From Macrostomum lignano (lineage: Eukaryota): DNA of 46,826 bases. The DNA lies in contig NIVC01004411.1 in assembly GCA_002269645.1 (NCBI GenBank), positions 1 through 46,826 on the forward strand, given 5' to 3'. Positions 1 through 46,826 of the stretch are shown here, one piece after another. The notes under the pieces are model-generated. The model worked only from the letters and a program-made list of their open reading frames with translations, did not search any database and was not told where the DNA came from. The position numbers and the translations under genes were made by a program. The first letter of the stretch is position 1. Every line of letters begins with the position of its first letter.

Positions 1-586
1 CAGGATATCTTGGCAAGACCTACAGTGTATTGTGTCTCCCCGTTCGTGAGAATGAATGATGAGCTGCCGCGTTTCATCGCTAATTTTAGTATTTTGGCCT
101 TGTGGAGGTTAAATCTCCGCCGTCAGAGAGCAGACAACGCGTCAGTCAATCAAGTCGTCAAAAGAAAAGGGCTGTTTGTGGTCTTACGAGACCACAAGCT
201 CGCACTTAAGTTTAGACCTGATCAAAGCCTCTCAGAAAAGCTTCGGCACTGAATGGTCTCAGTATAGCTTGGCCATAGACAAAATTCCGCTGCCTTTTCC
301 ACGGAGTCCTCTGCTTACAGGGTGTGGAAAATTTGTTGCCTCAGTTGGAAAACTGATCGCGCCTTCTAGCCACTTTGGTTTGGGCCATAGACTACTTTGA
401 CTAGGCGAAGCCACAGAGTCTCTGTGTCCATCCTTGAAAGCCCCGAGTGGAAAATTGAGGGTCACTCGTACTCGATGGATTTGATTGCAGCCGAGAATTA
501 GAATATGGAAAGCAAAAGTTTCTGGCAGTTATTATTATTTACTAGATAACTTGTTATAGTGTATTAAAAAAATTTAAGGTACCTAC

Positions 587-883
587 CGTCGAAATCGATC
601 TGCAAGAGACTCAGCGACAGGAGATCGTTGCTGCCGCAGACTCGCTTTTCTCCGTTGCACGTGGCGTCACAGTTAGAGGCGCTGCCAAACATCTTCATAT
701 TATCACCGTCGCTCTTTGATGCAGTAGCAGTCTGGGCTGGTCAGGCCCATGTAGACATAACCCTTTCCGTAGCAGCATTCTCTGCACATCTGGCTCGTCA
801 TGCCAGCAAAGTCATTTATGGCACATTTATAGGGCCCGAAGCTGCCGCTTTGAAATAGCAGCCAAGCTCGATTTGCAGCGGAC
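587..883 (-). pseudogene. WSC-domain exon (phase 1-1) with two frameshifts
   Basis: Acceptor TTCTCTAG| (884) and donor GACG|GTAGGT (587). Joining the frames gives ELGCYFK...INDFAGMTSQMCRECCYGKGYVYMGLTSPDCYC...GSASNCDATCNGEKRVCGSNDLLSL, which has all eight Cys of the WSC pattern. Confidence 0.75.
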
Positions 884-1184
884 CTAGAGAACAAATGCCG
901 ATCATATTTTTAATTTCAGTCACCCAGGCAATACATTTTTCAGAGGAATAGTGCCTTCTCTTTCTGTGCATTCTCAATGCTCAGTGCTCAGACTCTGTGT
1001 CTTTGGATCGGCCCTCATGGGGGCAGACCGAATACGTCTCATGGTTCTAAAGTCGAGTCTTTGGAATCGGTGCAACGACCCCTATTTAGAGCCGGTTTTC
1101 GACCCAAAATGCACTAGTGAGATACCGGGTACTAGGGAAGAATTTCCGTAAAAATGGAACATATTGAACTAGCTGCAGACTCAC

Positions 1185-1248
1185 CACCGACTCTTATGAA
1201 AGCACTCACACAAGGTGACTAGCGAGGCACGTGCACATAAAACTGGCT
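1185..1248 (-). pseudogene. Putative DEG/ENaC exon 3 (64 nt) with an in-frame TAG
   Basis: Acceptor TTCATAG| at 1249 and donor GGTG|GTGAGT at 1185; phase 0 in, phase 1 out. Translates SQFYVHVPR*SPCVSAFIRVG, resembling the ENaC/ASIC vH....P......v.pG segment. TAG at 1221-1219. Confidence 0.6.
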
Positions 1249-1438
1249 CTATGAACATAATTTGAGCAGACTCGCTACTCGTGTTGCAAAAAGCGACGAA
1301 AAACTATTTCATTAATGAGCCATTTAAATTCCACAAGTAAAAATTTACTAAACCTGATAGTTTCATTTACAATTCTTAAGTGCAGTCAATTAAGGATCAA
1401 CCTCTTGTTCAGGAAGGGAAATATAAGAGTATCCCGAA

Positions 1439-1776
1439 CAAGGATCACTAGAAGTTACCGTTGTATGTCTAGCACTATGTCTGCATAAAGCATAGCAAGT
1501 TTTAAACGAGTTGCAAGGTTGCATATGATGACATGTCATAAGTACTTTTATAAATATATGTGCATTTAACAAGTTAAAGCCCTAATAAATTATGAATACA
1601 CCTATTCTGGAGCTCCTGAGGCTCAAATTTAGTGCAAGCTTTTTTAAAACAGTCGACTAGAATGCTTTTTTGAAGCAAGCATCGCTAAATACACGTAAAC
1701 AAGCGGGCCTTCAATTAACTTTGCAATATTTACGAGTGTTGCGTCCTGATACAACGGTAACTTCTAGTGGTCCTTG
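1439..1776. mobile_element. 338-bp MITE (non-autonomous hAT- or P-like DNA transposon) in ENaC intron 2
   Basis: 28-bp terminal inverted repeats CAAGGA(T/C)CACTAGAAGTTACCGTTGTAT at 1439-1466 and 1749-1776 (1 mismatch). Perfect 8-bp TSD ATCCCGAA at 1431-1438 and 1777-1784. AT-rich non-coding interior. Confidence 0.88.
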
Positions 1777-1818
1777 ATCCCGAATTCTCGGTAAAGTTTT
1801 AATTGCGGTTTAACTTAC

Positions 1819-2907
1819 GATAGGACCCATTCCACACTGAGTCAGAGGGACGCCCGGAGGAGCTCTGCACTTGTTGTCACTCTCTGACAGGTTCAACGCC
1901 AGAATCAGGCCGGCTTGATGGACAGCTCGGTTCCACTCGGTGCAATTCTGGTAGCCCAGGTACGGCAAGGTGCCCGAGAAGCTGACGTTCGGTACGAATT
2001 TTTCTTCTCCAATACGTTGGTAGATGGGCACAACTGAGAGGCTACCATTGTACTCCTCACCAGCGTGCGTGATGCGACACTCGAATTGCTGTCTGCAACG
2101 GTGTTTGGGCACGACTCCTGAGTTGATAAGCCTAATCAGCTTAGGTTAGGCGTGTGCAGAGAAAGTTTAATGCAGAAAATGTTTACTGTAGCTGCAACCT
2201 TTAAATAGGCTAGCGAAATTTTTATTGTCACAATTAAGCTCCTGACAAAAGTCTTAGTAACTTTGATGCTCTGACAAGAACAGCTAGGCTATACCAGAGT
2301 TCTGAGCGTTCTAGGGTTCTCGAAGAAAAAGCATTGAGTAGTCGCAGAGCTCACGGTTAACAGCCTGTCGGTATTCTTTCATCAGCGATTGCTCCGTCCA
2401 GGAAATCACGTGAAACAGTGCCAGAATCTCCGGAGTAAGTCGCAACTCAGACGGGTGGGCGCCACTTACTTTTTTCTCCATGTCAAAGGCGAAGCTGTTC
2501 GACCAGCAGCAGTCAACTTGGGAGTTAGTTAAATACGTAGGCGAGATCCTCTCCACCATGGTGCTCATGGTGATCGCTCTGTGCGGGCACAGGTACACAT
2601 CCGGAAACTCGAACGGAAGCGAGGTCGCAATGGACGTGAGCACCGGTGCGCCCATGAACCGGTCGAACAGGCTGTACAGGTGGTACGTGAAGCCGCCGTA
2701 GGTGCCCAGCAGGAAGGTAAGCCAGATGACGCGACCCAAGGTGCCCGACTGGGAAGAGAACCGGCCGAGTCCGTGAGCGGAGGTGTAGCCGCAGAAGTCG
2801 GACACGAACTGAGTGACTTTCTGGGGCGGTGAATTTTCTTGTTGTTTGTCTTGCTGCTTCTCATCAGCCTGAAGGCCTTCCTCGGTCTGTCGCTCAGAAG
2901 CCATCAA
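1819..2907 (-). CDS. DEG/ENaC (amiloride-sensitive Na+ channel family) subunit, exons 1-2 (2907-2355, 2117-1819); gene continues leftward
   Basis: Pre-TM1 HG motif (FCGYTSAHGLGR), TM1 (VIWLTFLLGTYGGFTYHLYSLF), post-TM1 FPDVYLC (FPAVTVC-like), then YQNCTEWN...GLILALNL (GNCYTFN...GLxLxL-like). The phase-1 donor AACC|GTGAGC at 2355 matches the phase-1 acceptor CTCAG|GA at 2117; exon 2 ends at a phase-0 donor ATC|GTAAGT at 1819. Confidence 0.9.
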
Positions 2908-3404: not shown

Positions 3405-3916
<512 letters not shown>

Positions 3917-3989
3917 GTTCACAGAAGAGCAGAGGTAAGAAAACAGAAAAAATTTCATTATTTGATGGTCAGTTCACTGTTGGTCAGTT

Positions 3990-4233
3990 CAGTGAGCACA
4001 CAGAGATTCTGTTGGTCAGGCTAAGGCCAGTGAGCACACAGAGATTCTGTTGGTCAGGCTAAGGCCAGTGAGCACACAGAGATTCTGTTGGTCAGGCTAA
4101 GGCCAGTGAGCACACAGAGATTCTGTTGGTCAGGCTAAGGCCAGTGAGCACACAGAGATTCTGTTGGTCAGGCTAAGGCCAGTGACACACAGAGATTCTG
4201 TTGGTCAGGCCAGTGAACACACAGAAATTCTGT
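3990..4233. repeat. 38-bp minisatellite, about 6 copies
   Basis: Unit CAGTGAGCACACAGAGATTCTGTTGGTCAGGCTAAGGC; AGTGAGCACA recurs at 3991, 4029, 4067, 4105 and 4143. Confidence 0.95.
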
Positions 4234-5013: not shown

Positions 5014-6531
5014 TTAGGATTGAACCTCTAAAGGAATCAACGACTGGACTGGCCGTCTCACCCGTTCCCAGCGCCGGGAACTCCCAGCACCCGCAACGCG
5101 AAGAAGAACCGAACGGATAGCACCATCACGGCCAGGACGAACTTCCTTGACAATACCCAATTTCCATTTGAGTCTTGGTTGTCGAGCTTCACCTGCCAGA
5201 AGAACTACTTCACCAACATTTGGTGGACAGCGGTTAGGTTGATCCTTTAGGGCTTTCTCGCGCAGAGACTCCAAGTAGGACGTCTTCCATTGGTTCCAAA
5301 ATTGGTTCCAAGCTGCTCTAAGCATTCTAAGCCGTTTCGGAAGCGGTAGAACGGAGTCCGCCTCACCGTCGATATCTTCCGGTTCTTGGCTGAGACGACT
5401 AGCTGCCATGAAATGGGACGGTGTGATGAACTTCATACCGTCGCCTGAATCCGAAGGTACATACAACAGCGCCCGACAGTTAACCACAGCTTCGACTTCC
5501 ACAGTTAGAGTGATCAATTGGTCGTAGGTAAACAGCTGTCGACCTGCAGCCTTTTTTAGTGCCATCTTCACGATGCCAATCAGCCTTTCCCAGTAGCCTC
5601 CCCACCACGGGGCTCGCTCGGGCACAAAATGCCAAAAAATCTTCTTTGACGAACAGAACGACTGCAGCTCTTCTGAGATACTAGCGCCGATCAGTTTGGC
5701 GCCTGATCGAAATGTCCACGCATTGTCACTGACGACGGAGGGAATGCCCCGTCGAGCCACGAACCGACGCAGTGCATGCAGAAGCTGTTCGCTGTCCATA
5801 CTCGAAACAACTTCCAGGTGAACGGCTCGAGTTGCTGAGCAAGTGAAGAGCAGGATGTACGCCTTTTTGCTCTCACCACCCTCCCCCGTCCGATAGAATA
5901 TCGGACCAGCATAATCCAGTCCTACGGTACGAAAAGCACGAACAGTTGACAAACGGAAGGATGGAAGCTACGGAACCGCACTCATGGAAAACGGTCGACC
6001 TTGAAACTTCTTGCAGACAACACACTCCCCCAGTAACTGCTTCACGCGCTGTCTCGCCTTTAAAATCCAAAAACGTTCACGAAGCTTGCATATTGTTGCC
6101 GCGACCCCGGAATGCATCACAGCCGCATGGCAATGACGGACAAGCAGGGTTTCGAGCGGGTGCTTCGAGGGAATCAGCACTGGATTGTTGGTGTCGAAGG
6201 GCACAGCGCCCTGCAGACGACCCGCTGACCGAACTAATCCAGCAGGATCAAGGAACAATTTGAGATCGCGCACTAACGGCATACGAGGTCCAGAACCGCT
6301 GAGGCACGAAATTTCGTTCGACAATGATTCGCACTGTACGGCTCGCAGCACTGACTGTTCTGCCTGTAATACTTCCGTAGCCGTTAACAAGGATGGTCGC
6401 TTAACAATCCGATGGCGCAAGATGCTGACAAATCGCAAGATCCAACCAACCACTCGAGTGAGCTTGGTCCACGAAGAAAATCTTGAAATCTGAATCGCTT
6501 TGAGCAGAGAAGGTGAAGAAAATCGGTACAC
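5014..6531 (-). pseudogene. BEL/Pao integrase (Zn-binding domain, catalytic core, DUF5641-like tail), frameshifted near 5950-5970
   Basis: HCHAAVMH...CVVCKK (HHCC); VGLDYAGP, TCSATRAVHLEVV, VSDNAWTF, PWWGGYWERLIG; FWNQWKTSYL. Confidence 0.93.
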
Positions 6532-6659
6532 TCCACGGTCATCACAGTCGTCGTTTCGTTTTGCTCAGGTTCACAGTAGACTGCCGCCGGGGTTGCATCT
6601 CGCGTGTCATATCTTCGAAGAAATTCCGGACCGATAACCATGTCGCGTCACAAACCAAT

Positions 6660-8656
6660 TGCTCTGGCAAGCATCCTCGCGATGGCAGGTCGGCCGGGTT
6701 CGTCTCCCCTGACACGTGGTGCCATTACTGAGCCTCTGTCAACCGTCGAATTTCACTGACCCGATTTTGCACAAAGACTTGGCGTAGCTTGGACTCACAC
6801 GTGATCCACTGCAGTGTAGTCATGCTGTCTGTCCACAGTTGACGCTTAAGACCCGGAAGTTGGATTGAGACGAAGTCCATTAAACGAGCTAGAATTAATG
6901 CTCCAAGCAACTCCAATCGAGCAATGCTGATGGACACGACAGGCGCCACTCGAGCCTTAGCGATGAGAAGATGAGCAGAAACATCCTGGCGCTCATGATC
7001 GATAACCCTTAGGTACACGACAGCAGTATATGCTCGTTTACTAGCGTCAGAAAAACCGTGCAATTGCATTTCAATGCGACATGACTGCCATTGTTGAGGC
7101 ACGACACAACGATGAAGTTTCAGATTCAACGTCTTGAGTGAATCCAACCAGCGGGTCCATTTTGCTGCCATCTCACTCGGAATATCACCGTCCCACGGGA
7201 CTTTCTGCTTGCAAAGCTGTTGAAACCAGGCTTTGACCAGCGTCACTGCCGGTGTTAGGAACCCAAGTGGGTCAAACAGCTTTGAAAAAATTGAAAGCAT
7301 CATTCTCTTAGAGTACCGCTGACCTGCGACGGAGTCAAGCACTGCAGCGAACTCAAGCCGAAAAATGTCTTCATCCGGTTCCCCAGCAAGGCCAAGAACT
7401 TTCTTTGCTTTATCGACATCCGCTACAGGAAGCGACTTCATGAAATCCTTGGAATTTGACTGCCACTGCCGCATGTTCATGCCTGCTTCCGCAAAAATTC
7501 GCTTCGTCTGAGCGTACAACTCGCCGGCTTCTTCATCCGAATCGCAACAAGTGACTAAATTGTCCATGTACAGGCTAGTCTTTAAGATGTTTACAACTGT
7601 CCGAGCATCGTCTTGATGCAGTTCAAGGTGTCGCAATATGGTAGCTCGTAGAATCGCCGGTGAACAAGTTAGGCCAAAAGGTACTCGACAGAATCTATAA
7701 TGTATGACTTTGTAGGGCTCGTCGGGCGTCGTCTCTGTCCACAAGAACCGAAGAGCGTCTCGATCACGCGAGTCAATACCGATTTGAAGGAACGCTTTTT
7801 CAATGTCTGCTAGTACAGCTACCGACTTGAGGCGAAAGCGAAGAAAAATCGGGGGAATCAGTGGAAAACACGTAGGCCCCGTCAGCAGAAAGTCGTTGAT
7901 AGAGAAGTCTGTACTGTCCGTCTTTGCTGATCCGTCAAAAAGCATGCGTAGCTTCGTGTGTTCGCTATCCTTTTTCGTGACGCAGCTGTGTAGTAGATAA
8001 TGAATGATGTTCGGCGACTGGTCGTTGACGTCGACTGGAACTTTCTCGATGATGCCGAGCTCTTCTTGTTCGGAAAGAATAGCATCACACTGCGCTAGTT
8101 GTGCTGGATTACGCTGAAGATGTCGAATGCTCGCCTTTAGCCGAGTTGTCGCTACATTGAAATGGTCACGCAGGCTAATCGTCTCCTTGGAGAAACGCCA
8201 AGGCAACTGCACAGAATATCGTCCCTCATGCAGCTGCGGGTTGCAAGGGAAGACGTCGGACGAAACAGGTTGTGGGTCATCTAGAATCCCGATTGAGTCC
8301 AACCTCCAAAGAGAAGTGAAATCGTCATTTAAGGACTTCGAGACAGATATTTGGCCATTGACAAAGCAGCAAACTGCTGCTGTATTCGCGCAGTTGACCT
8401 CCTGGACACTTTGTAAATCCGATGATCGTTCCGAATCGCACTTTGAGATACTAAGCGTCAATGGTCCGCAGAGCACATAACCAAGCTTTGAAGAAATCGC
8501 AACGGGACCATGGGATCCACGAATAACCTCGTCGCCGACGATTTGATAAAAGAAATCTGATCCAATCAGTATCGAAATCGGAGTATGTCCGTCTCGTGTG
8601 TCATACGGATCGGCCAGATCCAAGCTGGATAGATGTTGGAATTCATTGACCCTCAC
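6660..8656 (-). pseudogene. BEL/Pao reverse transcriptase and RNase H, with a premature TAA at 6727-6725
   Basis: LRMLFDGS, LADIEKAFLQI, RVPFGLTCSP, LYMDN, FDPLGF, LHGFSDASKRAY, RLELLGA, WTDSM. The same frame continues after the stop as WHHVSGETNPADLPSR. Confidence 0.94.
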
Positions 8657-12481: not shown

Positions 12482-13474
12482 TCACAGTACCATCATCTCG
12501 AACTCCTTCAGCGAGTAGTAGTACCCATATTTTAAGTTCCAGATGGTGCCCTGTGCGTACATACCACCGATAGCCTCAGAGAAGTTTTTGTAAACTCCAT
12601 TGGGGTGCGTACTGTGGCAGGCGAAAAACCACCAGGCACCGGAATATACCTTGGCACAGTTGCTTTCCAGGTGGGCATCGTGATCAACGTCTTTCGTGCT
12701 GAACTGCCGGCCGCTGCTGTAGGACAGTGAGTCGCCGATGCCAGCGCTGCCGGAGAAGCCGGACACGCTCAGCCGGTAGTTGTCCGACTCGGGACCCACT
12801 GAGAAGCTGGAGTACTCAGCCCAGCTAATCGAGTCGTTCCAGTCCTTCATCAGGATCCTCAGCTTCCGTGCGCCAGATGACGTCAGAGTATGGAGAGAGT
12901 TCAGGCCTGGGAAGTTGAAAAGTTGAACATAGTTCCAATTATCCAAATTTAATTACAGAATATTAAAAAGCTTTCAACCCCACCGATCCAGTAGTTTCCA
13001 TCGGGTCCCTCGCCGAACTCGCTCTGGTACTGAGTCCAGTTGCGGTAAAAGTCCACTGAGCCGGACACCCTGTGCTGCACGGTGGTCCAGCAGTCACTGC
13101 CGGCTGTCTGCAATGTAAAAAGTTTTTTGCTAAAGTGTCAATTCAGACTATGTTAATGCGAATGCTGCTGACACAGGACTCACCCACACTTGATGATCTC
13201 CTTTGTTCACATCCCGGCACTTCCTGCAGTGGCTCAGGTCCAGGCGACACCTGAAGTGAGCGCACAGGCCGGAGCTGGCGTTGAACGCCACCAGCTGCAC
13301 AGCGGATTCGCTGCTTGCCACATTGAGGCATTCGACTTCCGAGCGCATGGAGCGCGAGCTCGCAACCTCATAGTCAGAGAGACCGTCGCGGCTGGTCCAA
13401 TAGGTTCGCTCGGGAGTGGCTAATTCAGCAAGTTGGAGTCCAACAATGAGCAGCAACAAGAGCTGAAGCATCAT
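12482..13474 (-). CDS. Secreted fibrinogen-related (FReD) protein with an N-terminal PAN/apple-like segment, 279 aa; exons 13474-13184, 13107-12984, 12906-12482
   Basis: Hydrophobic signal peptide [16 protein letters not shown]; [46 protein letters not shown]...GAWWFFACH. Two GT-AG introns (76 and 77 bp) with matching phases; 840 nt with no interruption. Confidence 0.92.
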
Positions 13475-13763
13475 TTTCTACAATTCATATTAAAAAATGA
13501 GAGCCACAGTTGCATTCCTACTGCTTATAGAAGCCGGATGAGACGAGAACGCGTGCGAGACTTCTGGTTTTGTCAGGAAAAATTACATAGGGGAAATTTT
13601 TATGGAAACTACCGAACTTAAGACAGGTGAAGTACATGTACACAGTGAAATAAAGGTAAAACACATACTCTAGGAAAATGTGGAAAAATCAGTCAAATGG
13701 TCGATACGATACCATGTGGAGGCTTTCCTACAAAGACACGCCTCATACAGACACGGGCCCGTT

Positions 13764-15531: not shown

Positions 15532-18500
15532 TTAGTTGCCATCCTTCCAGCGCGCAGTGAGGTACTCAGAGTAGTCCACGTAGCCGTCCTTGTCCAAATC
15601 ATGCTCGTCCATGACGTGGTCGATTTCTCCTAGAAAAATGGCAATAAAATTAGAACTACTTTCTGTTAGAATGTTTTTGAAACGTCCTTTTTGACTTGAA
15701 TTCAAGCTAGTTAGGAATTTGAATCACACTCCTTAAAAGCATGCGATGAAAAGTACATTAGTTGGCCGCTAAGTCGTGCATTCGGGTTTGAAAATTGGCC
15801 GAAGTGAACGAGTCCATTATGAAGGAATTTCTAAAGCCTAGCTAGTACAGTCTAAAATGCTTTCTTTTCACTGAAATCTTACAGCACCAATCCAGCAGAC
15901 CTTGATGCTTTTACAAATAATCAGTGGGTTGCAGGTGCACACGTAGCAACTTGTTGGCAAGAGCAGGCTGCAAATGTACAGACACGTGGAATCAATGCGC
16001 ACTTACTCTCCATTGAGGCGTGCTTCTCATTCACAAGTTTTTCTTTTTTCTCAGCAATCTGCTTTGGCGTCAGGGTTCGTTCCTCCTCCGGCGTCAAATG
16101 GTTCACATCGATGTAGTCGTAATGAGTCATGGCCTTCAGCATTTCCAGCCCATCAAGTTTGCCATTCTTGTCGAAGTCGTGAGACCTGAGGGTTGCGGGT
16201 TCAGGATGCCTGTAATTTGTAGCCTTCTGAATCTTTGTATTCGCTTTACGTAATAATTGACTGTTTTTATTGCATTATTGATAAGTCTGTTGTAGGATTC
16301 AGCTAATTTTGAAGCTTATACCCCAGTCGTTTCTTCTGGTCGTTTAAAATCGAACTTTATGATTCAGTTAAAAGCACAATGCTGGAAGCTTTGAACGTGA
16401 AACTGCAATTTCGTCTATTTTATTATGAGATCATTGCAAATAAAACTGTAAAGCATGATGCAACTCTCATAGTGCCCGAAATGTGCATGTGCCTTTAATT
16501 TTTGCTCTTTTGGTCCATGGCCCTGACTTGGCCTTAGTAACCAGAAATTCTGTGAGAGTTGCATCACGCTCTCAGGCACTATTTTTTAGTATCCCGAGAG
16601 CCGAAGGCTTTGTCTTCTATATAAGTCACTACAGGTGCCTATCAGCTAGACAGCTAGACAGCGCTCGAATCGGGTGACGTTTCAATCAGTAAAAGTACAA
16701 ATCAGAAACTGTAACCCGAGTATCCCGAGAGCCGAAGGCTTTGTCTTCTATATAAGTCACTACAGGTGCCTATCAGCTAGACAGCTAGACAGCGCTCGAA
16801 TCGGGTGACGTTTTAATCAGTAAAAGTACAAATCAGAAACTGTAACCCGAGTATCCCGAGAGCCGAAGGCTTTGTCTTCTATATAAGTCACTACAGGTGC
16901 CTATCAGCTAGACAGCTAGACAGCGCTCGAATCGGGTGACGTTTCAATCAGTAAAAGTACAAATCAGAAACTGTAACCCGAGTATCCCGAGAGCCGAAGG
17001 CTTTGTCTTCTATATAAGTCACTACAGGTGCCTATCAGCTAGACAGCTAGACAGCGCTCGAATCGGGTGACGTTTCAATCAGTAAAAGTACAAATCAGAA
17101 ACTGTAACCCGAGTATCCGAGAGCCGAAGGCTTTGTCTTCTATATAAGTCACTACAGGTGCCTATCAGCTAGACAGCTAGACAGCGCTCGAATCGGGTGA
17201 CGTTTTAATCAGTAAAAGTACAAATCAGAAACTGTAACCCATTCGCCCGTGTTTCACAGAAACGCTTTTCCATATAGAATTTCGAACAGAGCGTAGTGAG
17301 CGCAATTACTTTGATATGTGTCTAAAAATACTCTCTAGACAGGCGCGATTTTAAATTATTGCACAATAATTTTGCTCCCCGGCATTTGAGCCTCGGAGTG
17401 ATTCCTAGTCTTCTCGTGCCTGATTTTCATTGCGTTGTAAATGAAAATAAAGCCTACTTGTTTCGTGATCCGGGATTATTTATCCTTCCTGAAATTGACA
17501 GGAAATCGAACAACACCGCCAACTGTTCAATAGAAGCGCAGACTCAGCAAGAAAACTATAATTTATGAGTAAACTTCGCGGCTAGCTATTTCACTTCTTA
17601 CTTGTACTTTTACTCAGACAAACAAATAGCTTAGTAGCTCGGAATGAAAAGCATTAAACTAATTAACACAATTGATAATTCACTGAAAACTGCTTTCTGA
17701 GCTTTATAGAAAATTGCAGTCCTGAGCCGCAACTCCTGCCCAAATCCGTGTCCTGGCTTCATGGCAGACACAAAGGACTTTAAATGGATCGAAGTCCCTC
17801 GCTCAGCTGCGATCAATGCAATTCCCGCAGCCGCCTTCCCAACCCAGACCCACTCTAATTCCCTTATTGATTCGAACTATAACCCCCAGTCCAGGGGGAT
17901 TAATTCTCAGCTAGACTTTAGACTTTACGAGATGGCATTGAAAGTCAGTGCCGAAGTCACGAAATGCAGCGGACTTACTTGAATTCGTAGAACTCGATCT
18001 CAGACCGGCTCATCTCGCTGGGATCCTTCTTAATCCCGAAGTCCTCGCTGAGGTGAGACCTGATGTGGCTGGAAATGTTTTATTGTATTTCGGTTGCTGA
18101 GGCTTAGGGATCCTGGAACTCCGCTCCCTGAGGCTTAGGGATTTTGCGGATTAAAAATATGCCAAATGGCTGTTTCATTGAACCCCATTTTTGCATGAAC
18201 TTTTATGCTGCTTAAATAGTCTGCCATGGACAACTGGAGTCGAAGTATCACACTCGGTTTTCTAAGATATGAAATAAAGTCCAGTAAGGAACGAAGATTT
18301 GTCGTATCGCTGGTACACCTTTTCCCATGCAATATCAATCAAAGTCACATTCAATTCAATTCGATTCTCGGTTTAGGTGGCTTTTTATCACTTTGCTTGG
18401 CTTTGCAGTCTATGGCCCATGTGCATGGGAGAACGCAATGGTAGATTGTGCAAATGGTTTTAGAGGCAGACACGAGTGACTAAAATTAGTCATTGTCTCA

Positions 18501-20626
18501 TGAATGCATTTTTAATGGCCTTAAATAATGATTTCAAAGCGTTGAATAATGAGCGTACAGTATGGGACAATGAGCGTACAGTATGGGACAATGAGCGTAC
18601 AGTATGGGACAATGAGCGTACAGTATGGGACAATGAGCGTACAGTATGGGACAATGAGCGTACAGTATGGGACAATGAGCGTACAGTATGGGACAATGAG
18701 CGAACAGTATGGGACAATGAGCGTACAGTATGGGACAATGAGCGTACAGTATGGGACAATGAGCGTACAGTATGGGACAATGAGCGAACAGTATGGGACA
18801 ATGAGCGTACAGTATGGGACAATGAGCGAACAGTATGGGACAATGAGCGAACAGTATGGGACAATGAGCGTACAGTATGGGACAATGAGCGTACAGTATG
18901 GGACATGGAGCGTACAGCATGATACAATGAAGCCAACAATAACCTGCTACTGAAGTTCATCGGATTTCTTAAACAAAACTGTAGTGTAGTTCAGTGCGAT
19001 GTACGAGCGTACAATATTGGCGCGCAAATATTATTAGTCACGTGTTGCAATGTATTACGTAAGACTCACGCGCACTTACTCTTCACATATATAAATATAC
19101 TTGCAGGGCAAGTCGGCCCATTTCTAAGATTCTTCGTCCACTCGCAAACCCTCCGATTTTGTCTGAGTCACTACAAAAACGATTTCAACAATCTTACGTT
19201 TTTGCCCGACGAAGAACTTATCTAACGCATATGTTTTTCAAACGAATTTTAAATTGTATCCTAATTTTCTAATTTGAAAGCAAATGGCGCTTGTTATCTC
19301 ACAGACAAGAAAGTCACTCGCGAAAGTGTTTAAACTAAATTCAGTGTCCCTTTGGAGAATTTGAACGCAATTTTCTGTAACAGAATTTCCGCTTTTCTAA
19401 CAATAATTCTGGTTTGCTAAGATAAATAATTAACTGAGTAATTCCACGTTGATTGAGACACAAGATTGAGAAACTAAACTCAGACACAAGAGACTGAGAC
19501 ACAATGGACTCAGACACAAGGGACTGAGACACAATGGACTCAGACACAATGGACTGAGACACAATGGACTGAGACACAAGAGACTGAGACACAATGGACT
19601 CAGACACAAGAGACTGAGACACAATGGATTCAGACACAAGGGACTCAGACACAAGAGACTGAGACACAATGGACTCAGACACAAGAGACTGAGACACAAT
19701 GGACTCAGACACAAGGGACTCAGACACAAGAGACTGAGTCACAATGGACTCAGACACAAGAGACTGAGACACAATGGACTCAGACACAATGGACTCAGAC
19801 ACAGGAGACTGAGACACAATGGACTCAGACACAAGAGACTGAGACACAAGGGACTCAGACACAATGGACTCAGACACAAGGCACTGAGACACAATGGACT
19901 CAGACACAAGGGACTCAGACACAAGAGACTGAGACACAAGGGACTCAGACACAAGAGACTGAGTCACAATGGACTCAGACACAAGAGACTGAGACACAAT
20001 GGACTCAGACACAATGGACTCAGACACAGGAGACTGAGACACAATGGACTCAGACACAAGAGACTGAGACACAAGGGACTCAGACACAATGGACTCAGAC
20101 ACAAGGCACTGAGACACAATGGACTCAGACACAAGGGACTCAGACACAAGAGACTGAGACACAATGGACTCAGGCACAAGAGACTGAGACACAAGGGACT
20201 CAGACACAAGAGACTGAGACACAATGGACTCAGATACAATGGACTCAGACACAAGAGACTGAGACACAATGGACTCAGACACAATGGACTCAGACACAAG
20301 AGACTGAGACACAATGGACTCAGACACAATGGACTCAGACACAAGAGACTGAGACACAATGGACTCAGACACAAAGCACGTTGATTGAAATCGAAAGTGA
20401 AAAAGTATATTACTTGTGACATTATTAGTGACAGACTCGCTACACAATTTCATTTGACTCACTCGGCATTGGTCATGACTCGGTCATCGTGTATCCCGTG
20501 CGAGCCGTGCTGATGATGCCCAGCACTGGATGCTGAGCAAGTAGCGGTTAGCAACAAGGCGACTGCGGCCACATGCAGGACCAGCTTGGCAGCTCCGGAG
20601 GCCGCAGAAGGTTGGCAAGCCGTCAT
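15532..20626 (-). CDS. MCFD2: MCFD2-like two-EF-hand secretory-pathway protein, 176 aa; exons 20626-20463, 18068-17979, 16185-16007, 15629-15532
   Basis: Signal peptide, His-rich segment, DHIRSHL...EMSRSEIEFYEFKSHDFDKNGKLDGLEM (EF1) and IDHVMDEHDLDKDGYVDYSEY (EF2). All introns are GT-AG with consistent phases (2,2,1); 531 nt intact. Confidence 0.9.
16588..17240. repeat. 131-bp tandem repeat, 5 near-identical copies (MCFD2 intron 2)
   Basis: AGTATCC starts at 16588, 16719, 16850, 16981 and 17112. Confidence 0.96.
18548..18918. repeat. 21-bp minisatellite (AATGAGCGTACAGTATGGGAC), about 17.5 copies (MCFD2 intron 1)
   Basis: Read directly; T/A variant CGAACA. Confidence 0.97.
19457..20376. repeat. 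15-bp minisatellite (GACTGAGACACAATG family), about 61 copies
   Basis: Variants GACT(G/C)AGACACAA(TG/GA/GG); internal 225-bp (15-unit) duplication marked by GAGTCACA at about 19737 and 19962. Confidence 0.97.
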
Positions 20627-21278: not shown

Positions 21279-26070
<4,792 letters not shown>

Positions 26071-26077
26071 GTGAGAT

Positions 26078-27130: not shown

Positions 27131-30100
27131 CAGAGCTTCACTGGCACCCACAGAGCCTCACTGACACCCACAGAGCCTCACTGACACCCATAGAGCCTGA
27201 CTGACATCCACAGAGCCTGACTGACACCCACAGAGCCTCACTGACACCCACAGAGCCTCACTGACACCCACAGAGCCTCACTGGCACCCACAGAGCCTCA
27301 CTGGCACCCACAGAGCCTCACTGGCACCCACAGAGCCTCACTGACACCCATAGAGCCTGACTGACATCCACAGAGCCTCACTGACACCCACAGAGCCTCA
27401 CTGACACCCACAGAGCCTCACTGACACCCATAGAGCCTGACTGACATCCACAGAGCCTCACTGACACCCACAGAGCCTCACTGACACCCACAGAGCCTCA
27501 CTGACACCCACAGAGCCTCACTGGCACCCACAGAGCCTCACTGCACCCACAGAGCCTCACTGGCACCCACAGAGCCTCACTGACACCCACAGAGCCTCAC
27601 TGCACCCACAGAGCCTCACTGACACCCACAGAGCCTCACTGACACCCACACACCCACAGAGCCTCACTGACACCCACAGAGCCTCACTGACACCCACAGA
27701 GCCTCACTGACACCCACAGAGCCTCACTGACACCCACAGAGCCTCACTGACACCCACAGAGCCTCACTGACACCCACAGAGCCTCACTGACACCCACAGA
27801 GCCTCACTGACACCCACAGAGCCTCACTGGCACCCACAGAGCCTCACTGACACCCACAGAGCCTCACTGACACCCACAGAGCCTCACTGACACCCACAGA
27901 GCCTCACTGACACCCACAGAGCCTCACTGACACCCACAGAGCCTCACTGGCACCCACAGAGCCTCACTGACACCCACAGAGTCTCACTGACACCCACAGA
28001 GCCTCACTGGCACCCACAGAGCCTCACTGACACCCACAGAGCCTCACTGACACCCACAGAGCCTCACTGACACCCACAGAGCCTCACTGACACCCACAGA
28101 GCCTCACTGACACCCACAGAGCCTCACTGACACCCACAGAGCCTCACTGACACCCACAGAGCCTCACTGACACCCACAGAGCCTCACTGACACCCACAGA
28201 GCCTCACTGACACCCACAGAGCCTCACTGACACCCACAGAGCCTCACTGACACCCACAGAGCCTCACTGACACCCACAGAGCCTCACTGACACCCACAGA
28301 GCCTCACTGACACCCACAGAGCCTCACTGACACCCACAGAGCCTCACTGACACCCATAGAGCCTGACTGACACCCACAGAGCCTCACTGACACCCACAGA
28401 GCCTCACTGACACCCACAGAGCCTCACTGACACCCACAGAGCCTCACTGACACCCACAGAGCCTCACTGGCACCCACAGAGCCTCACTGACACCCACAGA
28501 GCCTCACTGGCATCCACAGAGCCTCACTGGCACCCACAGAGCCTCACTGACACCCACAGAGCCTCACTGGCACCCACAGAGCCTCACTGACACCCATAGA
28601 GCCTTACTGACACCCACAGAGCCTCACTGACACCCACAGAGCTCACTGGCACCACAGAGCCTCACTGACACCCACAGAGCCTCACTGACACCCACAGAGC
28701 CTCACTGACACCCACAGAGCCTCACTGACACCCACAGAGCCTCACTGACACCCACAGAGCCTCACTGCACCCACAGAGCTCACTGCACCCACAGAGCCTC
28801 ACTGACACCCACAGAGCCTCACTGACACCCACAGAGCCTGACTGACACCCACAGAGCCTCACTGACACCCACAGAGCCTCACTGACACCCACAGAGCCTC
28901 ACTGACACCCACAGAGCCTCACTGACACCCATAGAGCCTGACTGACATCCACAGAGCCTCACTGACACCCACAGAGCCTCACTGACACCCACAGAGCCTC
29001 ACTGACACCCACAGAGCCTCACTGACACCCACAGAGCCTCACTGGCACCCACAGAGCCTCACTGACACCCACAGAGCCTCACTGACACCCACAGAGCCTC
29101 ACTGACACCCATAGAGCCTGACTGACACCCACAGAGCCTCACTGGCACCCACAGAGCCTCACTGACACCCACAGAGCCTCACTGACACCCACAGAGCCTC
29201 ACTGACACCCACAGAGCCTCACTGACACCCACAGAGCCTCACTGACACCCACAGAGCCTCACTGGCACCCACAGAGCCTCACTGACACCCACAGAGCCTC
29301 ACTGACACCCACAGAGCCTCACTGACACCCACAGAGCCTCACTGACACCCACAGAGCCTCACTGACACCCACAGAGCCTCACTGACACCCACAGAGCCTC
29401 ACTGACACCCACAGAGCCTCACTGACACCCACAGAGCCTCACTGACACCCACAGAGCCTCACTGACACCCACAGAGCCTCACTGACACCCACAGAGCTTC
29501 ACTGGCACCCACAGAGCCTCACTGACACCCACAGAGCCTCACTGACACCCACAGAGCCTCACTGACACCCACAGAGCCTCACTGACACCCATAGAGCCTG
29601 ACTGACACCCACAGAGCCTCACTGACACCCACAGAGCCTCACTGACACCCACAGAGCCTCACTGACACCCACAGAGCCTCACTGACACCCACAGAGCCTC
29701 ACTGACACCCACAGAGCCTCACTGACACCCACAGAGCCTCACTGCATCCACAGAGCTCACTGCACCCACAGAGCCTCACTGACACCCACAGAGCCTCACT
29801 GCACCCACAGAGCCTCACTGACACCCATAGAGCCTTACTGACACCCACAGAGCCTCACTGACACCCACAGAGCCTCACTGACACCCACAGAGCTCACTGC
29901 ACCACAGAGCCTCACTGCACCCACAGAGCCTCACTGACACCCACAGAGCCTCACTGGCACCCACAGAGCTTCACTGGCACCCACAGAGCCTCACTGACAC
30001 CCACAGAGCCTCACTGGCACCCACAGAGCCTCACTGACACCCATAGAGCCTTACTGACACCCACAGAGCCTCACTGACACCCACAGAGCCTCACTGACAC

Positions 30101-33100
30101 CCACAGAGCTTCACTGGCACTCACAGAGCCTCACTGACACCCACAGAGCCTCACTGACACCCACAGAGCCTGACTGACACCCACAGAGCCTCACTGACAC
30201 CCACAGAGCCTCACTGACACCCACAGAGCCTCACTGGCACCCACAGAGCCTCACTGGCACCCACAGAGCCTCACTGACACCCACAGAGCCTCACTGACAC
30301 CCATAGAGCCTCACTGACACCCACAGAGCCTGACTGACACCCACAGAGCCTCACTGACACCCACAGAGCCTCACTGACACCCACAGAGCCTCACTGGCAC
30401 CCACAGAGCCTCACTGGCACCCACAGAGCCTCACTGGCACCCACAGAGCCTCACTGACACCCATAGAGCCTGACTGACATCCACAGAGCCTCACTGACAC
30501 CCACAGAGCCTCACTGACACCCACAGAGCCTCACTGACACCCATAGAGCCTGACTGACATCCACAGAGCCTGACTGACACCCACAGAGCCTCACTGACAC
30601 CCACAGAGCCTCACTGACACCCACAGAGCCTCACTGGCACCCACAGAGCCTCACTGGCACCCACAGAGCCTCACTGCACCCACAGAGCCTCACTGACACC
30701 CACAGAGCCTCACTGGCACCCACAGAGCCTCACTGACACCCACAGAGCCTCACTGACACCCACACACCCACAGAGCCTCACTGACACCCACAGAGCCTCA
30801 CTGACACCCACAGAGCCTCACTGACACCCACAGAGCCTCACTGACACCCACAGAGCCTCACTGACACCCACAGAGCCTCACTGACACCCACAGAGCCTCA
30901 CTGACACCCACAGAGCCTCACTGCACCCACAGAGCCTCACTGACACCCACAGAGCCTCACTGACACCCACAGAGCCTCACTGACACCCACAGAGCCTCAC
31001 TGACACCCACAGAGCCTCACTGGCACCCACAGAGCCTCACTGACACCCACAGAGCCTCACTGACACCCACAGAGCCTCACTGACACCCACAGAGCCTCAC
31101 TGACACCCACAGAGCTCACTGACACCACAGAGCCTCACTGACACCCACAGAGCCTCACTGACACCCACAGAGCCTCACTGACACCCACAGAGCCTCACTG
31201 ACACCCACAGAGCCTCACTGACACCCACAGAGCCTCACTGCACCCACAGAGCTTCACTGGCACCCACAGAGCCTCACTGACACCCACAGAGCCTCACTGA
31301 CACCCACAGAGCCTCACTGACACCACAGAGCCTGACTGACACCCACAGAGCCTCACTGACACCCACAGAGCCTCACTGACACCCACAGAGCCTCACTGGC
31401 ACCCACAGAGCCTCACTGCACCCACAGAGCCTCACTGACACCCACAGAGCCTCACTGACACCCATAGAGCCTGACTGACACCACAGAGCCTCACTGACAC
31501 CCACAGAGCCTCACTGACACCCACAGAGCCTCACTGACACCCATAGAGCCTCACTGACACCACAGAGCCTCACTGACACCCACAGAGCCTCACTGACACC
31601 CACAGAGCCTCACTGACACCCACAGAGCCTCACTGACACCCACAGAGCCTCACTGGCACCCACAGAGCCTCACTGACACCCACAGAGCCTCACTGACACC
31701 CACAGAGCCTCACTGACACCCACAGAGCCTCACTGACACCCACAGAGCCTCACTGACACCCACACACCCACAGAGCCTCACTGACACCCACAGAGCCTCA
31801 CTGACACCCACAGAGCCTCACTGACACCCACAGAGCCTCACTGACACCCACAGAGCCTCACTGACACCCACAGAGCCTCACTGACACCCACAGAGCCTCA
31901 CTGACACCCACAGAGCCTCACTGACACCCACAGAGCCTCACTGACACCCACAGAGCCTCACTGACACCCACAGAGCCTCACTGACACCCACAGAGCCTCA
32001 CTGACACCCACAGAGCCTCACTGACACCCACAGAGCCTCACTGACACCCACAGAGCCTCACTGACACCCACAGAGCCTCACTGACACCCACAGAGCCTCA
32101 CTGACACCCACAGAGCCTCACTGACACCCACAGAGCCTCACTGACACCCACAGAGCCTCACTGACACCCACAGAGCCTCACTGACACCCACAGAGCCTCA
32201 CTGACACCCACAGAGCCTCACTGACACCCACAGAGCCTCACTGACACCCACAGAGCCTCACTGACACCCACAGAGCCTCACTGACACCCACAGAGCCTCA
32301 CTGACACCCACAGAGCCTCACTGACACCCACAGAGCCTCACTGACACCCACACCCACAGAGCCTCACTGACACCCACAGAGCCTCACTGACACCCACAGA
32401 GCCTCACTGACACCCACAGAGCCTCACTGACACCCACAGAGCCTCACTGACACCCACAGAGCCTCACTGACACCCACAGAGCCTCACTGACACCCACAGA
32501 GCCTCACTGACACCCACAGAGCCTCACTGACACCCACAGAGCCTCACTGACACCCACAGAGCCTCACTGACACCCACAGAGCCTCACTGACACCCACAGA
32601 GCCTCACTGACACCCACAGAGCCTCACTGACACCCACAGAGCCTCACTGACACCCACAGAGCCTCACTGACACCCACAGAGCCTCACTGACACCCACAGA
32701 GCCTCACTGACACCCACAGAGCCTCACTGACACCCACAGAGCCTCACTGACACCCACAGAGCCTCACTGACACCCACAGAGCCTCACTGACACCCACAGA
32801 GCCTCACTGACACCCACAGAGCCTCACTGACACCCACAGAGCCTCACTGACACCCACAGAGCCTCACTGACACCCACAGAGCCTCACTGACACCCACAGA
32901 GCCTCACTGACACCCACAGAGCCTCACTGACACCCACAGAGCCTCACTGACACCCACAGAGCCTCACTGACACCCACAGAGCCTCACTGACACCCACAGA
33001 GCCTCACTGACACCCACAGAGCCTCACTGACACCCACAGAGCCTCACTGACACCCACAGAGCCTCACTGACACCCACAGAGCCTCACTGACACCCACAGA

Positions 33101-45100: not shown

Positions 45101-46826
45101 CCTCACTGACACCCACAGAGCCTCACTGACACCCACAGAGCCTCACTGACACCCACAGAGCCTCACTGACACCCACAGAGCCTCACTGACACCCACAGAG
45201 CCTCACTGACACCCACAGAGCCTCACTGACACCCACAGAGCCTCACTGACACCCACAGAGCCTCACTGACACCCACAGAGCCTCACTGACACCCACAGAG
45301 CCTCACTGACACCCACAGAGCCTCACTGACACCCACAGAGCCTCACTGACACCCACAGAGCCTCACTGACACCCACAGAGCCTCACTGACACCCACAGAG
45401 CCTCACTGACACCCACAGAGCCTCACTGACACCCACAGAGCCTCACTGACACCCACAGAGCCTCACTGACACCCACAGAGCCTCACTGACACCCACAGAG
45501 CCTCACTGACACCCACAGAGCCTCACTGACACCCACAGAGCCTCACTGACACCCACAGAGCCTCACTGACACCCACAGAGCCTCACTGACACCCACAGAG
45601 CCTCACTGACACCCACAGAGCCTCACTGACACCCACAGAGCCTCACTGACACCCACAGAGCCTCACTGACACCCACAGAGCCTCACTGACACCCACAGAG
45701 CCTCACTGACACCCACAGAGCCTCACTGACACCCACAGAGCCTCACTGACACCCACAGAGCCTCACTGACACCCACAGAGCCTCACTGACACCCACAGAG
45801 CCTCACTGACACCCACAGAGCCTCACTGACACCCACAGAGCCTCACTGACACCCACAGAGCCTCACTGACACCCACAGAGCCTCACTGACACCCACAGAG
45901 CCTCACTGACACCCACAGAGCCTCACTGCACCCACAGAGCCTCACTGACACCCACAGAGCCTCACTGACACCCACAGAGCCTCACTGACACCCACAGAGC
46001 CTCACTGACACCCACAGAGCCTCACTGACACCCACAGAGCCTCACTGACACCCACAGAGCCTCACTGACACCCACAGAGCCTCACTGACACCCACAGAGC
46101 CTCACTGCACCCAGAGCCTCACTGACACCCACAGAGCCTCACTGACACCCACAGAGCCTCACTGACACCCACAGAGCCTCACTGACACCCACAGAGCCTC
46201 ACTGACACCACAGAGCCTCACTGACACCCACAGAGCCTCACTGACACCCACAGAGCCTCACTGACACCCACAGAGCCTCACTGACACCCACAGAGCCTCA
46301 CTGACACCCACAGAGCCTCACTGACACCCACAGAGCCTCACTGACACCCACAGAGCCTCACTGGCACCCACAGAGCCTCACTGACACCCACAGAGCCTCA
46401 CTGACACCCACAGAGCCTCACTGACACCCACAGAGCCTCACTGACACCCACAGAGCCTCACTGACACCCACAGAGCCTCACTGACACCCACAGAGCCTCA
46501 CTGACACCCACAGAGCCTCACTGCACCCACAGAGCCTCACTGCACCCACAGAGCCTCACTGCACCACACAGAGCCTCACTGACACCCACAGAGCCTCACT
46601 GACACCACAGAGCCTCACTGACACCCACAGAGCCTCACTTGACACCCACAGAGCCTCACTGACACCACAGAGCCTCACTGACACCCACAGAGCACTGCAC
46701 ACCACAGAGCCTCACTGACACCCACAGAGCCTCACTGACACCCACAGAGCCTCACTGACACCCACAGAGCCTCACTGACACCCACAGAGCCTCACTGACA
46801 CCCACAGAGCCTCACTGACACCCACA
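27131..46826. repeat. 20-bp satellite (CAGAGCCTCACTGACACCCA)n, about 985 copies, open at the window end
   Basis: Read directly; diverged left edge, near-perfect core, indel-rich last 900 bp. Stops occur in all frames on both strands. Confidence 0.99.

What the first reader, a model, noticed from the sequence alone, without database searches (positions are those of the whole stretch)
587..2907. DEG/ENaC channel gene apparently spliced to a WSC-domain exon
Seen: four same-strand exons whose phases chain exactly (1, 0, 1): ENaC N-terminus and TM1; ENaC palm/beta-ball; a 64-nt ENaC-like exon; then a symmetric phase 1-1 exon encoding all eight WSC cysteines. Established: WSC is an extracellular, putatively glycan-binding module (fungal wall sensors, polycystin-1, Kremen), and phase 1-1 exons are the classic exon-shuffling unit. 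Inference: a WSC module was inserted into the channel ectodomain just ahead of the thumb, which could give a carbohydrate-sensing or matrix-tethered DEG/ENaC. I do not recognise this as a standard architecture, but cannot confirm it is novel.
Basis: partly seen in the sequence, partly recalled or inferred. Interest (0 to 1): 0.72.

Follow-up and report, generated by a model that had tools for sequence, protein, structure and literature searches.

The report
Broken flatworm sodium-channel gene with WSC insert
This is the front half of an unannotated, frame-broken copy of a Macrostomum lignano sodium-channel (DEG/ENaC) family whose intact members really do carry a WSC module, nested inside a kringle module, in the outer "finger" of the channel.

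Summary
The window comes from the flatworm Macrostomum lignano. On the minus strand, three pieces are colinear and homologous with a set of M. lignano proteins that combine Pfam ASC (DEG/ENaC) with WSC and kringle-like modules: exon 1 (2904..2355), exon 2 (2117..1819) and the WSC exon (883..587). Full-length, transcript-annotated paralogs (PAA82974.1, PAA47210.1) encode WSC on one phase 1-1 exon spliced between channel exons.

Several details are wrong:
- The 64-nt "exon" has an in-frame stop, no counterpart in any paralog, and no such exon in two paralog loci.
- Exon 2 is not palm or beta-ball. It is the N-terminal two thirds of a kringle that the WSC exon splits.
- The cassette sits in the finger region (ASC profile about 130-137), not next to the thumb.
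- As assembled, this copy is not an open gene. Exon 2 is one base short of the family's phase, and the WSC exon needs two compensating 1-nt frameshifts.

The copy is most likely a young pseudogene. Long-read indel errors are the main rival. I found no paper that describes the architecture, though the sequences are already public as uncharacterised proteins.

The parts
2355..2904 (-). Exon 1 (550 nt, ends in phase 1). Holds the start codon, the cytoplasmic N-terminus with the HG motif (FCGYTSAHGLGRF), TM1, FEFPDVYLCP and the first finger helices.
   Evidence: Open frame. Pfam ASC 53.7 bits, profile positions 1-105. Family HMM 186 bits, hmm 3-163. tblastn against P0097 gives E 5.8e-34 at 43% identity, aligned up to position 2356. 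Donor TTAACC|gtgagc.
2118..2354 (-). Intron 1 (237 nt, phase 1).
   Evidence: Splice sites. Paralogs have a phase-1 intron at the homologous place.
1819..2117 (-). Exon 2 (299 nt, phase 1 in, phase 0 out). N-terminal two thirds of kringle 1 (ECR..GEEYNG..C.EWN..KCRAPPGVPL). It is not ENaC palm or beta-ball.
   Evidence: No Pfam ASC hit. Family HMM 60.5 bits, hmm 164-255. tblastn E 1e-11 to 1e-15. The equivalent paralog exons are 303 and 297 nt, phase 1-1. Kringle assignment rests on hhalign of the paralogs with WSC left out: probability 97.9%, E 3.7e-13.
1815..1837 (-). Lesion zone 1. The exon is 3n-1 nt and ends in phase 0 at a perfect gtaagt donor, whereas the family and the next exon require phase 1.
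   Evidence: Homology holds through PPGVPLT, so the missing base lies in the last ~20 nt or at the donor.
884..1818 (-). Intron 2 (935 nt). It is 299 nt in P0097.
1436..1779 (.). MITE-like element with 31-nt terminal inverted repeats (94% complementary), inside intron 2.
1185..1248 (-). Rejected as an exon.
Evidence: The 62-nt alternative reading PVLCARASLVTLCECFHKSRW falls in an alignment gap against P0001-P0003. It scores -3 bits against the family HMM. L001 and L002 have no exon between the equivalent exons.
587..883 (-). WSC exon (297 nt, AG/GT bounded, phase 1-1 by homology). All eight cysteines are present, but it reads in three frame segments.
   Evidence: The frame-repaired translation scores Pfam WSC 27.7 bits against a cut-off of 27.8 and 38.3 bits on the family HMM, hmm 267-350. 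tblastn of P0097 against 834..712 gives E 6e-4.
819..857 (-). Frameshift A inside the WSC exon (frame A to frame B). A GGGCCC run at 838..833 is a candidate site.
   Evidence: Frame A hits TAA at 818..816. WSC homology continues in frame B from about 834.
706..720 (-). Frameshift B inside the WSC exon (frame B back to frame A), within ATCAAAGAGCGACGG.
   Evidence: Frame B hits TGA TAA at 705..700. Frame A is open from 740 and carries the last three WSC cysteines.
1..586 (-). Sequence downstream of the WSC exon. No kringle or channel exon is detectable. The rest of the gene (kringle 1 C-part, kringle 2, palm, thumb, TM2) must lie left of the window, or has decayed.
   Evidence: The family HMM and two sub-HMMs give no hit above background here.

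Best explanation
The locus is the 5' part of an unannotated member of a Macrostomum lignano DEG/ENaC subfamily. In that subfamily, a cassette of phase 1-1 exons lies in a phase-1 intron of the finger region. The cassette encodes kringle 1, split by a nested WSC exon, followed by kringle 2.

Intact paralogs are complete channel subunits. They have the HG motif, TM1, the cassette, CxFxGxxC and GxCxxF, the thumb cysteine ladder and a TM2 with a G-I/V-S filter. The cassette therefore decorates the finger, the peripheral and most variable part of the ectodomain. In other DEG/ENaC channels the finger holds ligand- or protease-sensing elements. The likely role of the cassette is to bind an extracellular ligand or matrix component and bias gating. 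That role is inferred, not shown.

In this particular copy the reading frame is broken three times by 1-nt changes: once at the 3' end of exon 2 and twice in the WSC exon. Spliced as the consensus sites dictate (2355>2117, 1819>883), the mRNA would stop 18 codons into the WSC exon. That gives a 301-aa product with TM1 only and no pore. I take it to be a young pseudogene of an otherwise long-independent paralog, at most 43% identical to its nearest annotated relative.

Shown: homology, colinearity, exon structure and the frame breaks in the assembled sequence.
Inferred: that the breaks are real, and the function of the cassette.
For: - Species. The FReD and globin exons in the window are 100% identical to M. 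lignano proteins.
- Family. P0001-P0003 carry ASC and WSC. An exhaustive HMMER search finds 10 clusters at E<1e-30, all M. lignano. P0097, P0098 and P0250 pass the Pfam WSC gathering score with 39-41 bits and match ASC on both sides of the insert.
- Fold. The P0097 model matches FaNaC, ENaC and ASIC structures (E 1.5e-17). TM2 aligns to FaNaC.
- Exon structure. In two paralog loci the kringle N-part exon is 303/297 nt, the WSC exon 300/312 nt, the kringle C-part exon 123/123 nt and the kringle 2 exon 195/201 nt. All are phase 1-1.
- Nesting. WSC sits inside a kringle: hhalign probability 97.9%, E 3.7e-13, covering 86 of 86 template positions.
- Window. Hits are colinear over hmm 3-163, 164-255, 288-317 and 324-351. 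A model without the 64-nt exon aligns as one domain over hmm 3-350 at 301.7 bits.
- Frame breaks..
- No annotation. No protein from this locus appears in the searched collections, although the neighbouring FReD and globin genes are annotated. The NCBI annotation is transcript-based (PMC5730564).
Against: - All three lesions are single-base frame changes, two of them beside short homopolymer runs. No nonsense substitution and no loss of a conserved residue is visible in the corrected frames. That is also the signature of long-read consensus errors.
- I could not see reads or a second assembly of this locus.
- Exons 1 and 2 (849 nt) are flawless, which is slightly odd for a neutral pseudogene.
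- The 3' two thirds of the gene lie outside the window.
- Absence from the annotations could reflect low or cell-restricted expression.
Confidence: 0.6

Rival explanations
1. The gene is intact and functional in the animal. The three 1-nt frame changes are indel errors of a long-read assembly of a repetitive, neopolyploid genome.
For: - The lesions are pure 1-nt frame changes. A GGGCCC run lies within the 819..857 interval and an AAA run within 706..720, and a G|GT context could sit at the exon 2 donor.
- In the corrected frames all eight cysteines and the family-conserved residues are kept, and the score rises from 19+6 to 38 bits.
- The two WSC shifts compensate, so the exon length stays at 3n (297 nt).
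- Mlig_3_7 is a Canu PacBio assembly polished with Pilon. It has 180-312 Mb of duplicated sequence in which short reads map ambiguously (PMC5730564).
Against: - Three errors fall within about 1.2 kb, but none in the 849 nt of exons 1-2 or in the FReD and globin exons of the same window, which are 100% identical to database proteins.
- No protein from this locus or from a near-identical homeologue is present in either annotation.
Confidence: 0.33
2. The WSC exon belongs to a different gene, or is a stray shuffled exon, and merely lies downstream of an ordinary DEG/ENaC gene.
For: WSC is promiscuous in M. lignano, for example the WSC+FReD model P0020. The frame of exon 2 does not fit the WSC exon as assembled.
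Against: Order, strand, exon boundaries and linker length match those of the paralogs, where the same join is part of a 1052-aa channel. From PL to GC there are 15 residues in both the window and P0097. With the WSC exon frame-repaired and one base assumed at the exon 2/WSC junction, a single HMM domain spans exon 1 to the WSC exon.
Confidence: 0.03
3. The ASC+WSC+kringle architecture of the paralogs is a gene-model artefact: a kringle/WSC gene nested between two halves of a channel gene.
For: Many UniProt models for M. lignano are fragmentary or chimeric. Examples are P0100 named for a BCAS3 domain, P0248 for Mab-21, and P0104 with ASC plus FReD.
Against: - The insert is flanked by ASC profile positions 1-129 and 132/137-455, which are useless apart.
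- Exon phases are continuous through 14 exons in two independent loci.
- The NCBI models derive from a genome-guided transcriptome.
- Several clusters less than 50% identical to each other, and two mapped loci, share the same order.
Confidence: 0.04

Closest known systems
DEG/ENaC channels (Pfam ASC PF00858), nearest solved structures FaNaC (7YVB, 8ON7), then ENaC and ASIC
   Same: The window has the HG motif, TM1 and the FP.V..C strand. The paralogs add the CxFxGxxC/GxCxxF motif, the thumb cysteine ladder and a TM2 reading GLWSGISVLT, as in FaNaC. The predicted fold matches FaNaC, ENaC and ASIC.
   Different: An insert of about 390 residues, made of kringle and WSC modules, sits in the finger. 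This copy is frame-broken, and its pore half is outside the window.
Finger-domain elaborations in other DEG/ENaC members (ENaC GRIP domain; extra cysteine-rich domains of nematode degenerins). Recalled from general knowledge, not tested here.
   Same: Same place in the fold: the peripheral and most variable finger is used as a regulatory or sensing platform.
   Different: Those elements are family-specific. They are not mobile, independently folding modules such as WSC or kringle that were brought in as phase 1-1 exons.
Kremen1/2 (kringle-WSC-CUB ectodomain)
   Same: Kringle and WSC modules are combined in one extracellular unit. P0002 gives weak hits to Kremen WSC (5FWW) and to HGF kringles.
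   Different: No CUB domain. WSC is nested inside kringle 1 rather than following it. The host protein is an ion channel, not a single-pass receptor.
M. lignano ASC+kringle-only proteins (P0102, P0106, P0112)
   Same: Same species. Kringle sits at the same ASC profile position (about 132).
   Different: No WSC detected. They may represent the state before the WSC exon entered the intra-kringle intron.

Membership tests
DEG/ENaC (Pfam ASC) | Cytoplasmic N-terminus with the HG motif, followed by TM1 and the post-TM1 strand | tested here: met
   FCGYTSAHGLGRF, TM1 and FEFPDVYLCP are present in exon 1. Pfam ASC scores 53.7 bits against a cut-off of 23.6, profile positions 1-105.
DEG/ENaC (Pfam ASC) | Palm/beta-ball motif CxFxGxxC...GxCxxF, thumb cysteine ladder, TM2 with G/S-x-S filter | not testable with these tools
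   These parts lie left of window position 1. They are present in paralogs P0097 and P0250.
DEG/ENaC (Pfam ASC) | Uninterrupted reading frame across the spliced exons | tested here: not met
   Consensus splicing gives a stop 18 codons into the WSC exon. Three 1-nt frame corrections are needed.
WSC domain (PF01822) | Eight-cysteine pattern and a Pfam score at or above gathering (27.8 bits) | tested here: inconclusive
   All eight cysteines are present. After frame repair the score is 27.7 bits, E 3.1e-6. The family HMM gives 38.3 bits. Paralogs reach 39-41 bits.
Kringle (PF00051) | Six-cysteine kringle with G..Y.G, C..W, CR.P and PWC/PYC, ending C.VP.C | tested here: inconclusive
   Paralogs with WSC left out: hhalign probability 97.9%, E 3.7e-13, full template. 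Pfam stays below gathering. Window exon 2 alone aligns over only 16 residues, probability 15%. It carries C1, GEEYNG, C.EWN and CRAPPG by direct reading.
Kremen-like KR-WSC-CUB receptors | Kringle, then WSC, then CUB in a single-pass receptor | tested here: not met
   No protein shows a CUB hit. WSC is nested in the kringle. The host is a two-TM channel subunit.
Class 1-1 exon-shuffled module | Module encoded by an exon with phase-1 introns on both sides | tested here: met
   Paralog WSC exons are 300 and 312 nt, phase 1-1, inside a run of phase 1-1 exons. The window exon is 297 nt with boundaries at the homologous residues.

The most novel reading that the evidence does not exclude
M. lignano, and perhaps Macrostomorpha more widely, evolved a clade of DEG/ENaC sodium channels whose finger carries a Kremen-like kringle/WSC cassette built by nested exon shuffling. 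Through this cassette the channels would be gated or tethered by an extracellular glycan, matrix or protein ligand. That would be a new gating modality for the superfamily.
Probability: 0.25. Interest if true: 0.7.

Novelty: new variant of a known kind. Interest (0 to 1): 0.5.

Why it matters
DEG/ENaC channels are gated by protons, peptides, proteases, bile acids and force, and much of that sensing involves the finger. I found no published description of a subfamily in which the finger has acquired independently folding, ligand-binding modules (WSC nested in a kringle, plus a second kringle) by textbook phase 1-1 exon shuffling.

Such a subfamily would give a natural test of whether the finger can serve as a general docking site for new sensors. 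M. lignano is transgenic-capable and RNAi-amenable, so this could be tested directly.

For annotation, the locus shows how an arithmetic phase match can create a false mini-exon. It also shows that this copy should be flagged as disrupted, or re-polished.

Tried and rejected
1. My own frameshift- and intron-aware protein-to-DNA alignment of P0001 and P0002 to 1..1900. It recovered the WSC middle and C-part with a frameshift near 720, but otherwise overfitted short noise 'exons'. I did not use it for boundaries.
2. By-eye candidates for the kringle 1 C-part (RNFCFPYSNSRLQS, 538..404) and kringle 2 (VVYGPNQ...EFCLWPS, about 400..250) in 1..586. Neither the family HMM nor dedicated sub-HMMs rank them above background, so I dropped them.
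3. Pfam Kringle on the WSC-deleted concatenation of paralog exons. It detected only the C-terminal 20 residues or nothing. Only profile-profile comparison showed the full kringle.
4. AlphaFold2 of P0097 with a 32-sequence alignment. Mean pLDDT was 67, but the WSC region (265-363) was below 50. The model confirms the channel fold but says nothing about how WSC packs.
5. Exact-protein look-ups of P0001 and of the exon 1 ORF found no contig. I therefore could not fetch a second assembly or reads for this locus.
6. Literature searches: 'WSC domain'+ENaC; amiloride-sensitive+WSC+kringle; kringle domain+ENaC+finger domain; M. lignano+ENaC. No paper describes the architecture. The M. lignano channels tested in PMC9234716 are other genes.
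7. An alternative donor 4 nt downstream (GTAA|gttaaa) would make exon 2 303 nt and phase 1, like P0097. Its +3 T is unlike all 12 mapped donors of L001, and a perfect gtaagt lies 4 nt upstream. I consider it unlikely.
Full report
**Where the window comes from**

The window is eukaryotic and rich in satellites. A fibrinogen-related gene (13477..12485, minus) and a globin gene (exons 21279..21524 and 25774..26073, plus) match Macrostomum lignano UniRef proteins P0006/P0008 and P0015. The FReD exons and the first globin exon are 100% identical. The window is therefore M. lignano DNA.

**What is at 587..2907**

The gene is on the minus strand.
- Exon 1 starts at ATG 2904, directly after an in-frame stop. 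It stays open through to a phase-1 donor at 2355 (C|gtgagc). It carries FCGYTSAHGLGRF, a TM1 and FEFPDVYLCP. Pfam ASC scores 53.7 bits against a gathering score of 23.6, profile positions 1-105.
- Exon 2 runs from 2117 (acceptor ...ctcag|) to 1819 (ATC|gtaagt). It is 299 nt, entering in phase 1 and leaving in phase 0.
- The segment 883..587 is bounded by ...ctctag| and |gtaggt and is 297 nt long.

**Relatives**

A composite query found three M. lignano proteins (P0001-P0003). They are 33-37% identical over 94% of the query and are pre-annotated with both PF00858 and PF01822.

An exhaustive HMMER search with P0002 against 1.84 billion representatives found 10 clusters at E<1e-30. All are M. lignano. 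They include complete subunits: P0097 = PAA82974.1 (1052 aa), P0250 = PAA47210.1 (1091 aa) and P0242 = PAA86857.1 (1033 aa).

P0097, P0098 and P0250 pass the Pfam WSC gathering score with 39-41 bits. They match ASC on both sides of the insert: profile 1-129 before it, and 132/137-455 after it. P0097 aligns to FaNaC, ASIC and ENaC chains in TM2 (GLWSGISVLT) and at CTFGEHLC...GVCHRFN. Its AlphaFold2 model (mean pLDDT 67) matches FaNaC, ENaC and ASIC structures at E 1.5e-17.

Every other listed hit matches either the ASC N-terminus or the WSC/kringle region of P0002, not both. The non-Macrostomum ones whose sources I looked up carry only ASC, only WSC or only kringle. In these collections, the architecture is seen only in M. 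lignano.

**Exon structure of intact paralogs**

I mapped P0097 on L001 and P0250 on L002, both from GCA_002269645.1, with exact splice junctions.

| Exon | P0097 | P0250 | Phase |
|---|---|---|---|
| pre-WSC (kringle N-part) | 303 nt | 297 nt | 1-1 |
| WSC | 300 nt | 312 nt | 1-1 |
| kringle C-part ('half-kringle') | 123 nt | 123 nt | 1-1 |
| kringle 2 | 195 nt | 201 nt | 1-1 |

The channel exon before the cassette ends in phase 1. The channel resumes after another phase-1 intron. There is no mini-exon between the pre-WSC and WSC exons. According to PMC5730564, the NCBI models come from a genome-guided transcriptome. The join is therefore transcript-derived, although I did not see reads myself.

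**WSC is nested in a kringle**

I joined the pre-WSC exon to the kringle C-part exon, leaving WSC out. The joined paralog sequences align to a kringle profile over all 86 template positions (hhalign probability 97.9%, E 3.7e-13). C1, G.EY.G, C..W and CR.P come from the first exon. GPYCF and C.VP.C come from the second.

Pfam alone sees only fragments of this kringle. Window exon 2 has no ASC match and is homologous to that first exon (60.5 bits). It therefore encodes the kringle N-part, not palm or beta-ball. On its own it aligns to the kringle profile over only 16 residues, so this assignment is by transitivity through the family.

**The window copy against the family**

I built an HMM from 13 family members and searched it against all 3434 stop-to-stop pieces of the window, both strands. 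It gives four colinear top hits and nothing else.

| Piece | Bits | HMM positions |
|---|---|---|
| exon 1 | 186 | 3-163 |
| exon 2 | 60.5 | 164-255 |
| 909..706, frame B | 19.6 (E 2.7e-5) | 288-317 |
| 740..567, frame A | 5.4 | 324-351 |

With the two shifts repaired, the WSC exon scores 38.3 bits over hmm 267-350. A model built from exon 1, exon 2 and the WSC exon, with the WSC exon frame-repaired and one base assumed at the exon 2/WSC junction, aligns as a single domain over hmm 3-350 at 301.7 bits. The nearest paralog is P0097, 43% identical in exon 1. This is therefore a distinct, old family member.

- The 64-nt exon (1248..1185) converts phase 0 into phase 1, which is why the phases 'chain'. 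In that frame it reads SQFYVHVPR-stop.
- The 62-nt alternative reading has no counterpart in the relatives. It scores -3 bits.
- The cassette lies at ASC profile position about 130-137, in the finger region ahead of CxFxGxxC. The thumb cysteine ladder comes several hundred residues later (P0097 residues about 786-803).

**The frame breaks**

1. Exon 2 is 299 nt, where paralogs have 303 and 297. It ends in phase 0, where the family and the next exon need phase 1. Homology holds to PPGVPLT, so the lesion lies in 1837..1815 or at the donor.
2. Inside the WSC exon, frame A stops at 818..816 while WSC homology continues in frame B from about 834. A GGGCCC run lies at 838..833.
3. Frame B stops at 705..700 and frame A resumes after CYC, within 720..706 (ATCAAAGAGCGACGG).

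With the consensus splice sites, the product would be 283 residues followed by 18 out-of-frame residues and a stop. That is TM1 plus a partial ectodomain with no pore.

**Pseudogene or assembly error?**

For a pseudogene:
- The three lesions cluster in the cassette, while exons 1-2 and the neighbouring FReD and globin exons are clean.
- No protein from this locus, or from a near-identical homeologue, is in either M. lignano annotation, though its neighbours are.

For assembly error:
- All lesions are 1-nt frame changes next to short runs. There are no nonsense substitutions, and every conserved residue is kept.
- The published assemblies are PacBio-based, and the genome has extensive near-identical duplication.

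I put it at about 0.55-0.6 pseudogene against about 0.33 error. Only reads can settle it.

**Downstream**

Nothing in 1..586 matches the kringle C-part, kringle 2 or channel exons above background. The rest of the gene is outside the window or has decayed.

**Function**

Intact paralogs look like competent subunits. They have the HG motif, the conserved cysteines and a G-I/V-S filter, as in FaNaC. The cassette sits in the finger. A ligand-, glycan- or matrix-binding role that modulates gating is the most economical inference, but nothing here tests it. M. lignano also has ASC+kringle-only proteins (P0102, P0106, P0112). These fit a stepwise history in which the kringles came first and the WSC exon later dropped into the intra-kringle phase-1 intron.

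**Novelty**

The sequences are public as 'WSC domain-containing' or hypothetical proteins. Four full-text searches found no paper describing a DEG/ENaC with WSC or kringle modules. The M. lignano channels assayed in PMC9234716 are different genes. I rate this a new variant of a known kind. The family is of moderate interest. This locus is of low interest in itself, because it is probably dead.

Noticed in passing
window 27131-46826: A 19.7-kb array of about 985 copies of the 20-mer CAGAGCCTCACTGACACCCA, with 98% matches. It runs to the end of the window and has strong strand asymmetry (GC skew -0.5).
   Followed up: no
window 3405-4210: (GGTGTCT)n with about 73 copies, followed by a 38-mer repeated 5.8 times, 0.5-1.3 kb upstream of the channel gene's ATG.
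   Followed up: no
window 1436-1779: A MITE-like element of about 344 bp with 31-nt terminal inverted repeats (94% complementary), inside the intron between exon 2 and the WSC exon. It accounts for part of the intron's extra length compared with the paralog.
   Followed up: partly
window 5014-8656 (pol ORFs; further unassigned ORFs up to about 11600), minus strand: A BEL/Pao-type LTR retroelement. Its pol is split into at least three ORFs: RVT_1 + Peptidase_A17 at 6725-8656, Integrase_H2C2 at 5968-6531, and rve + DUF5641 at 5014-5952. One frame change and one in-frame stop separate them, so this is a degenerate copy.
   Followed up: partly
window 12485-13477, minus strand: A secreted fibrinogen-related (FReD) gene whose exons are 100% identical to M. 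lignano UniRef proteins P0006 and P0008. M. lignano has dozens of paralogs about 70% identical to it.
   Followed up: partly
window 21279-26073, plus strand: A globin gene matching P0015. Exon 1 (21279-21524) is 100% identical and the next exon (25774-26073) aligns at 81%. The roughly 4.2-kb intron is filled with (CTAT)n and 15-, 24- and 20-mer minisatellites, and a 30-mer array follows the second exon. The last about 45 residues of P0015 are not found in the window.
   Followed up: partly
window 16588-17240, 18548-18930, 19478-20374, 22563-23343: Several minisatellite arrays (131-mer x5, 21-mer x18, 15/30/45/75-mer arrays). The arrays at 19478 and 22563 have related units (ACTCAGACACAAGGG and GGACTGAGACACAAT).
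   Followed up: no
proteins P0104 and P0020 (M. lignano UniRef): P0104 joins an ASC N-terminus to a Fibrinogen_C domain. P0020 joins FReD to WSC. Either lectin-like modules are shuffled widely in this species, or these are fused gene models of neighbouring genes. This window has the same pairing, with a FReD gene upstream of the channel gene.
   Followed up: no
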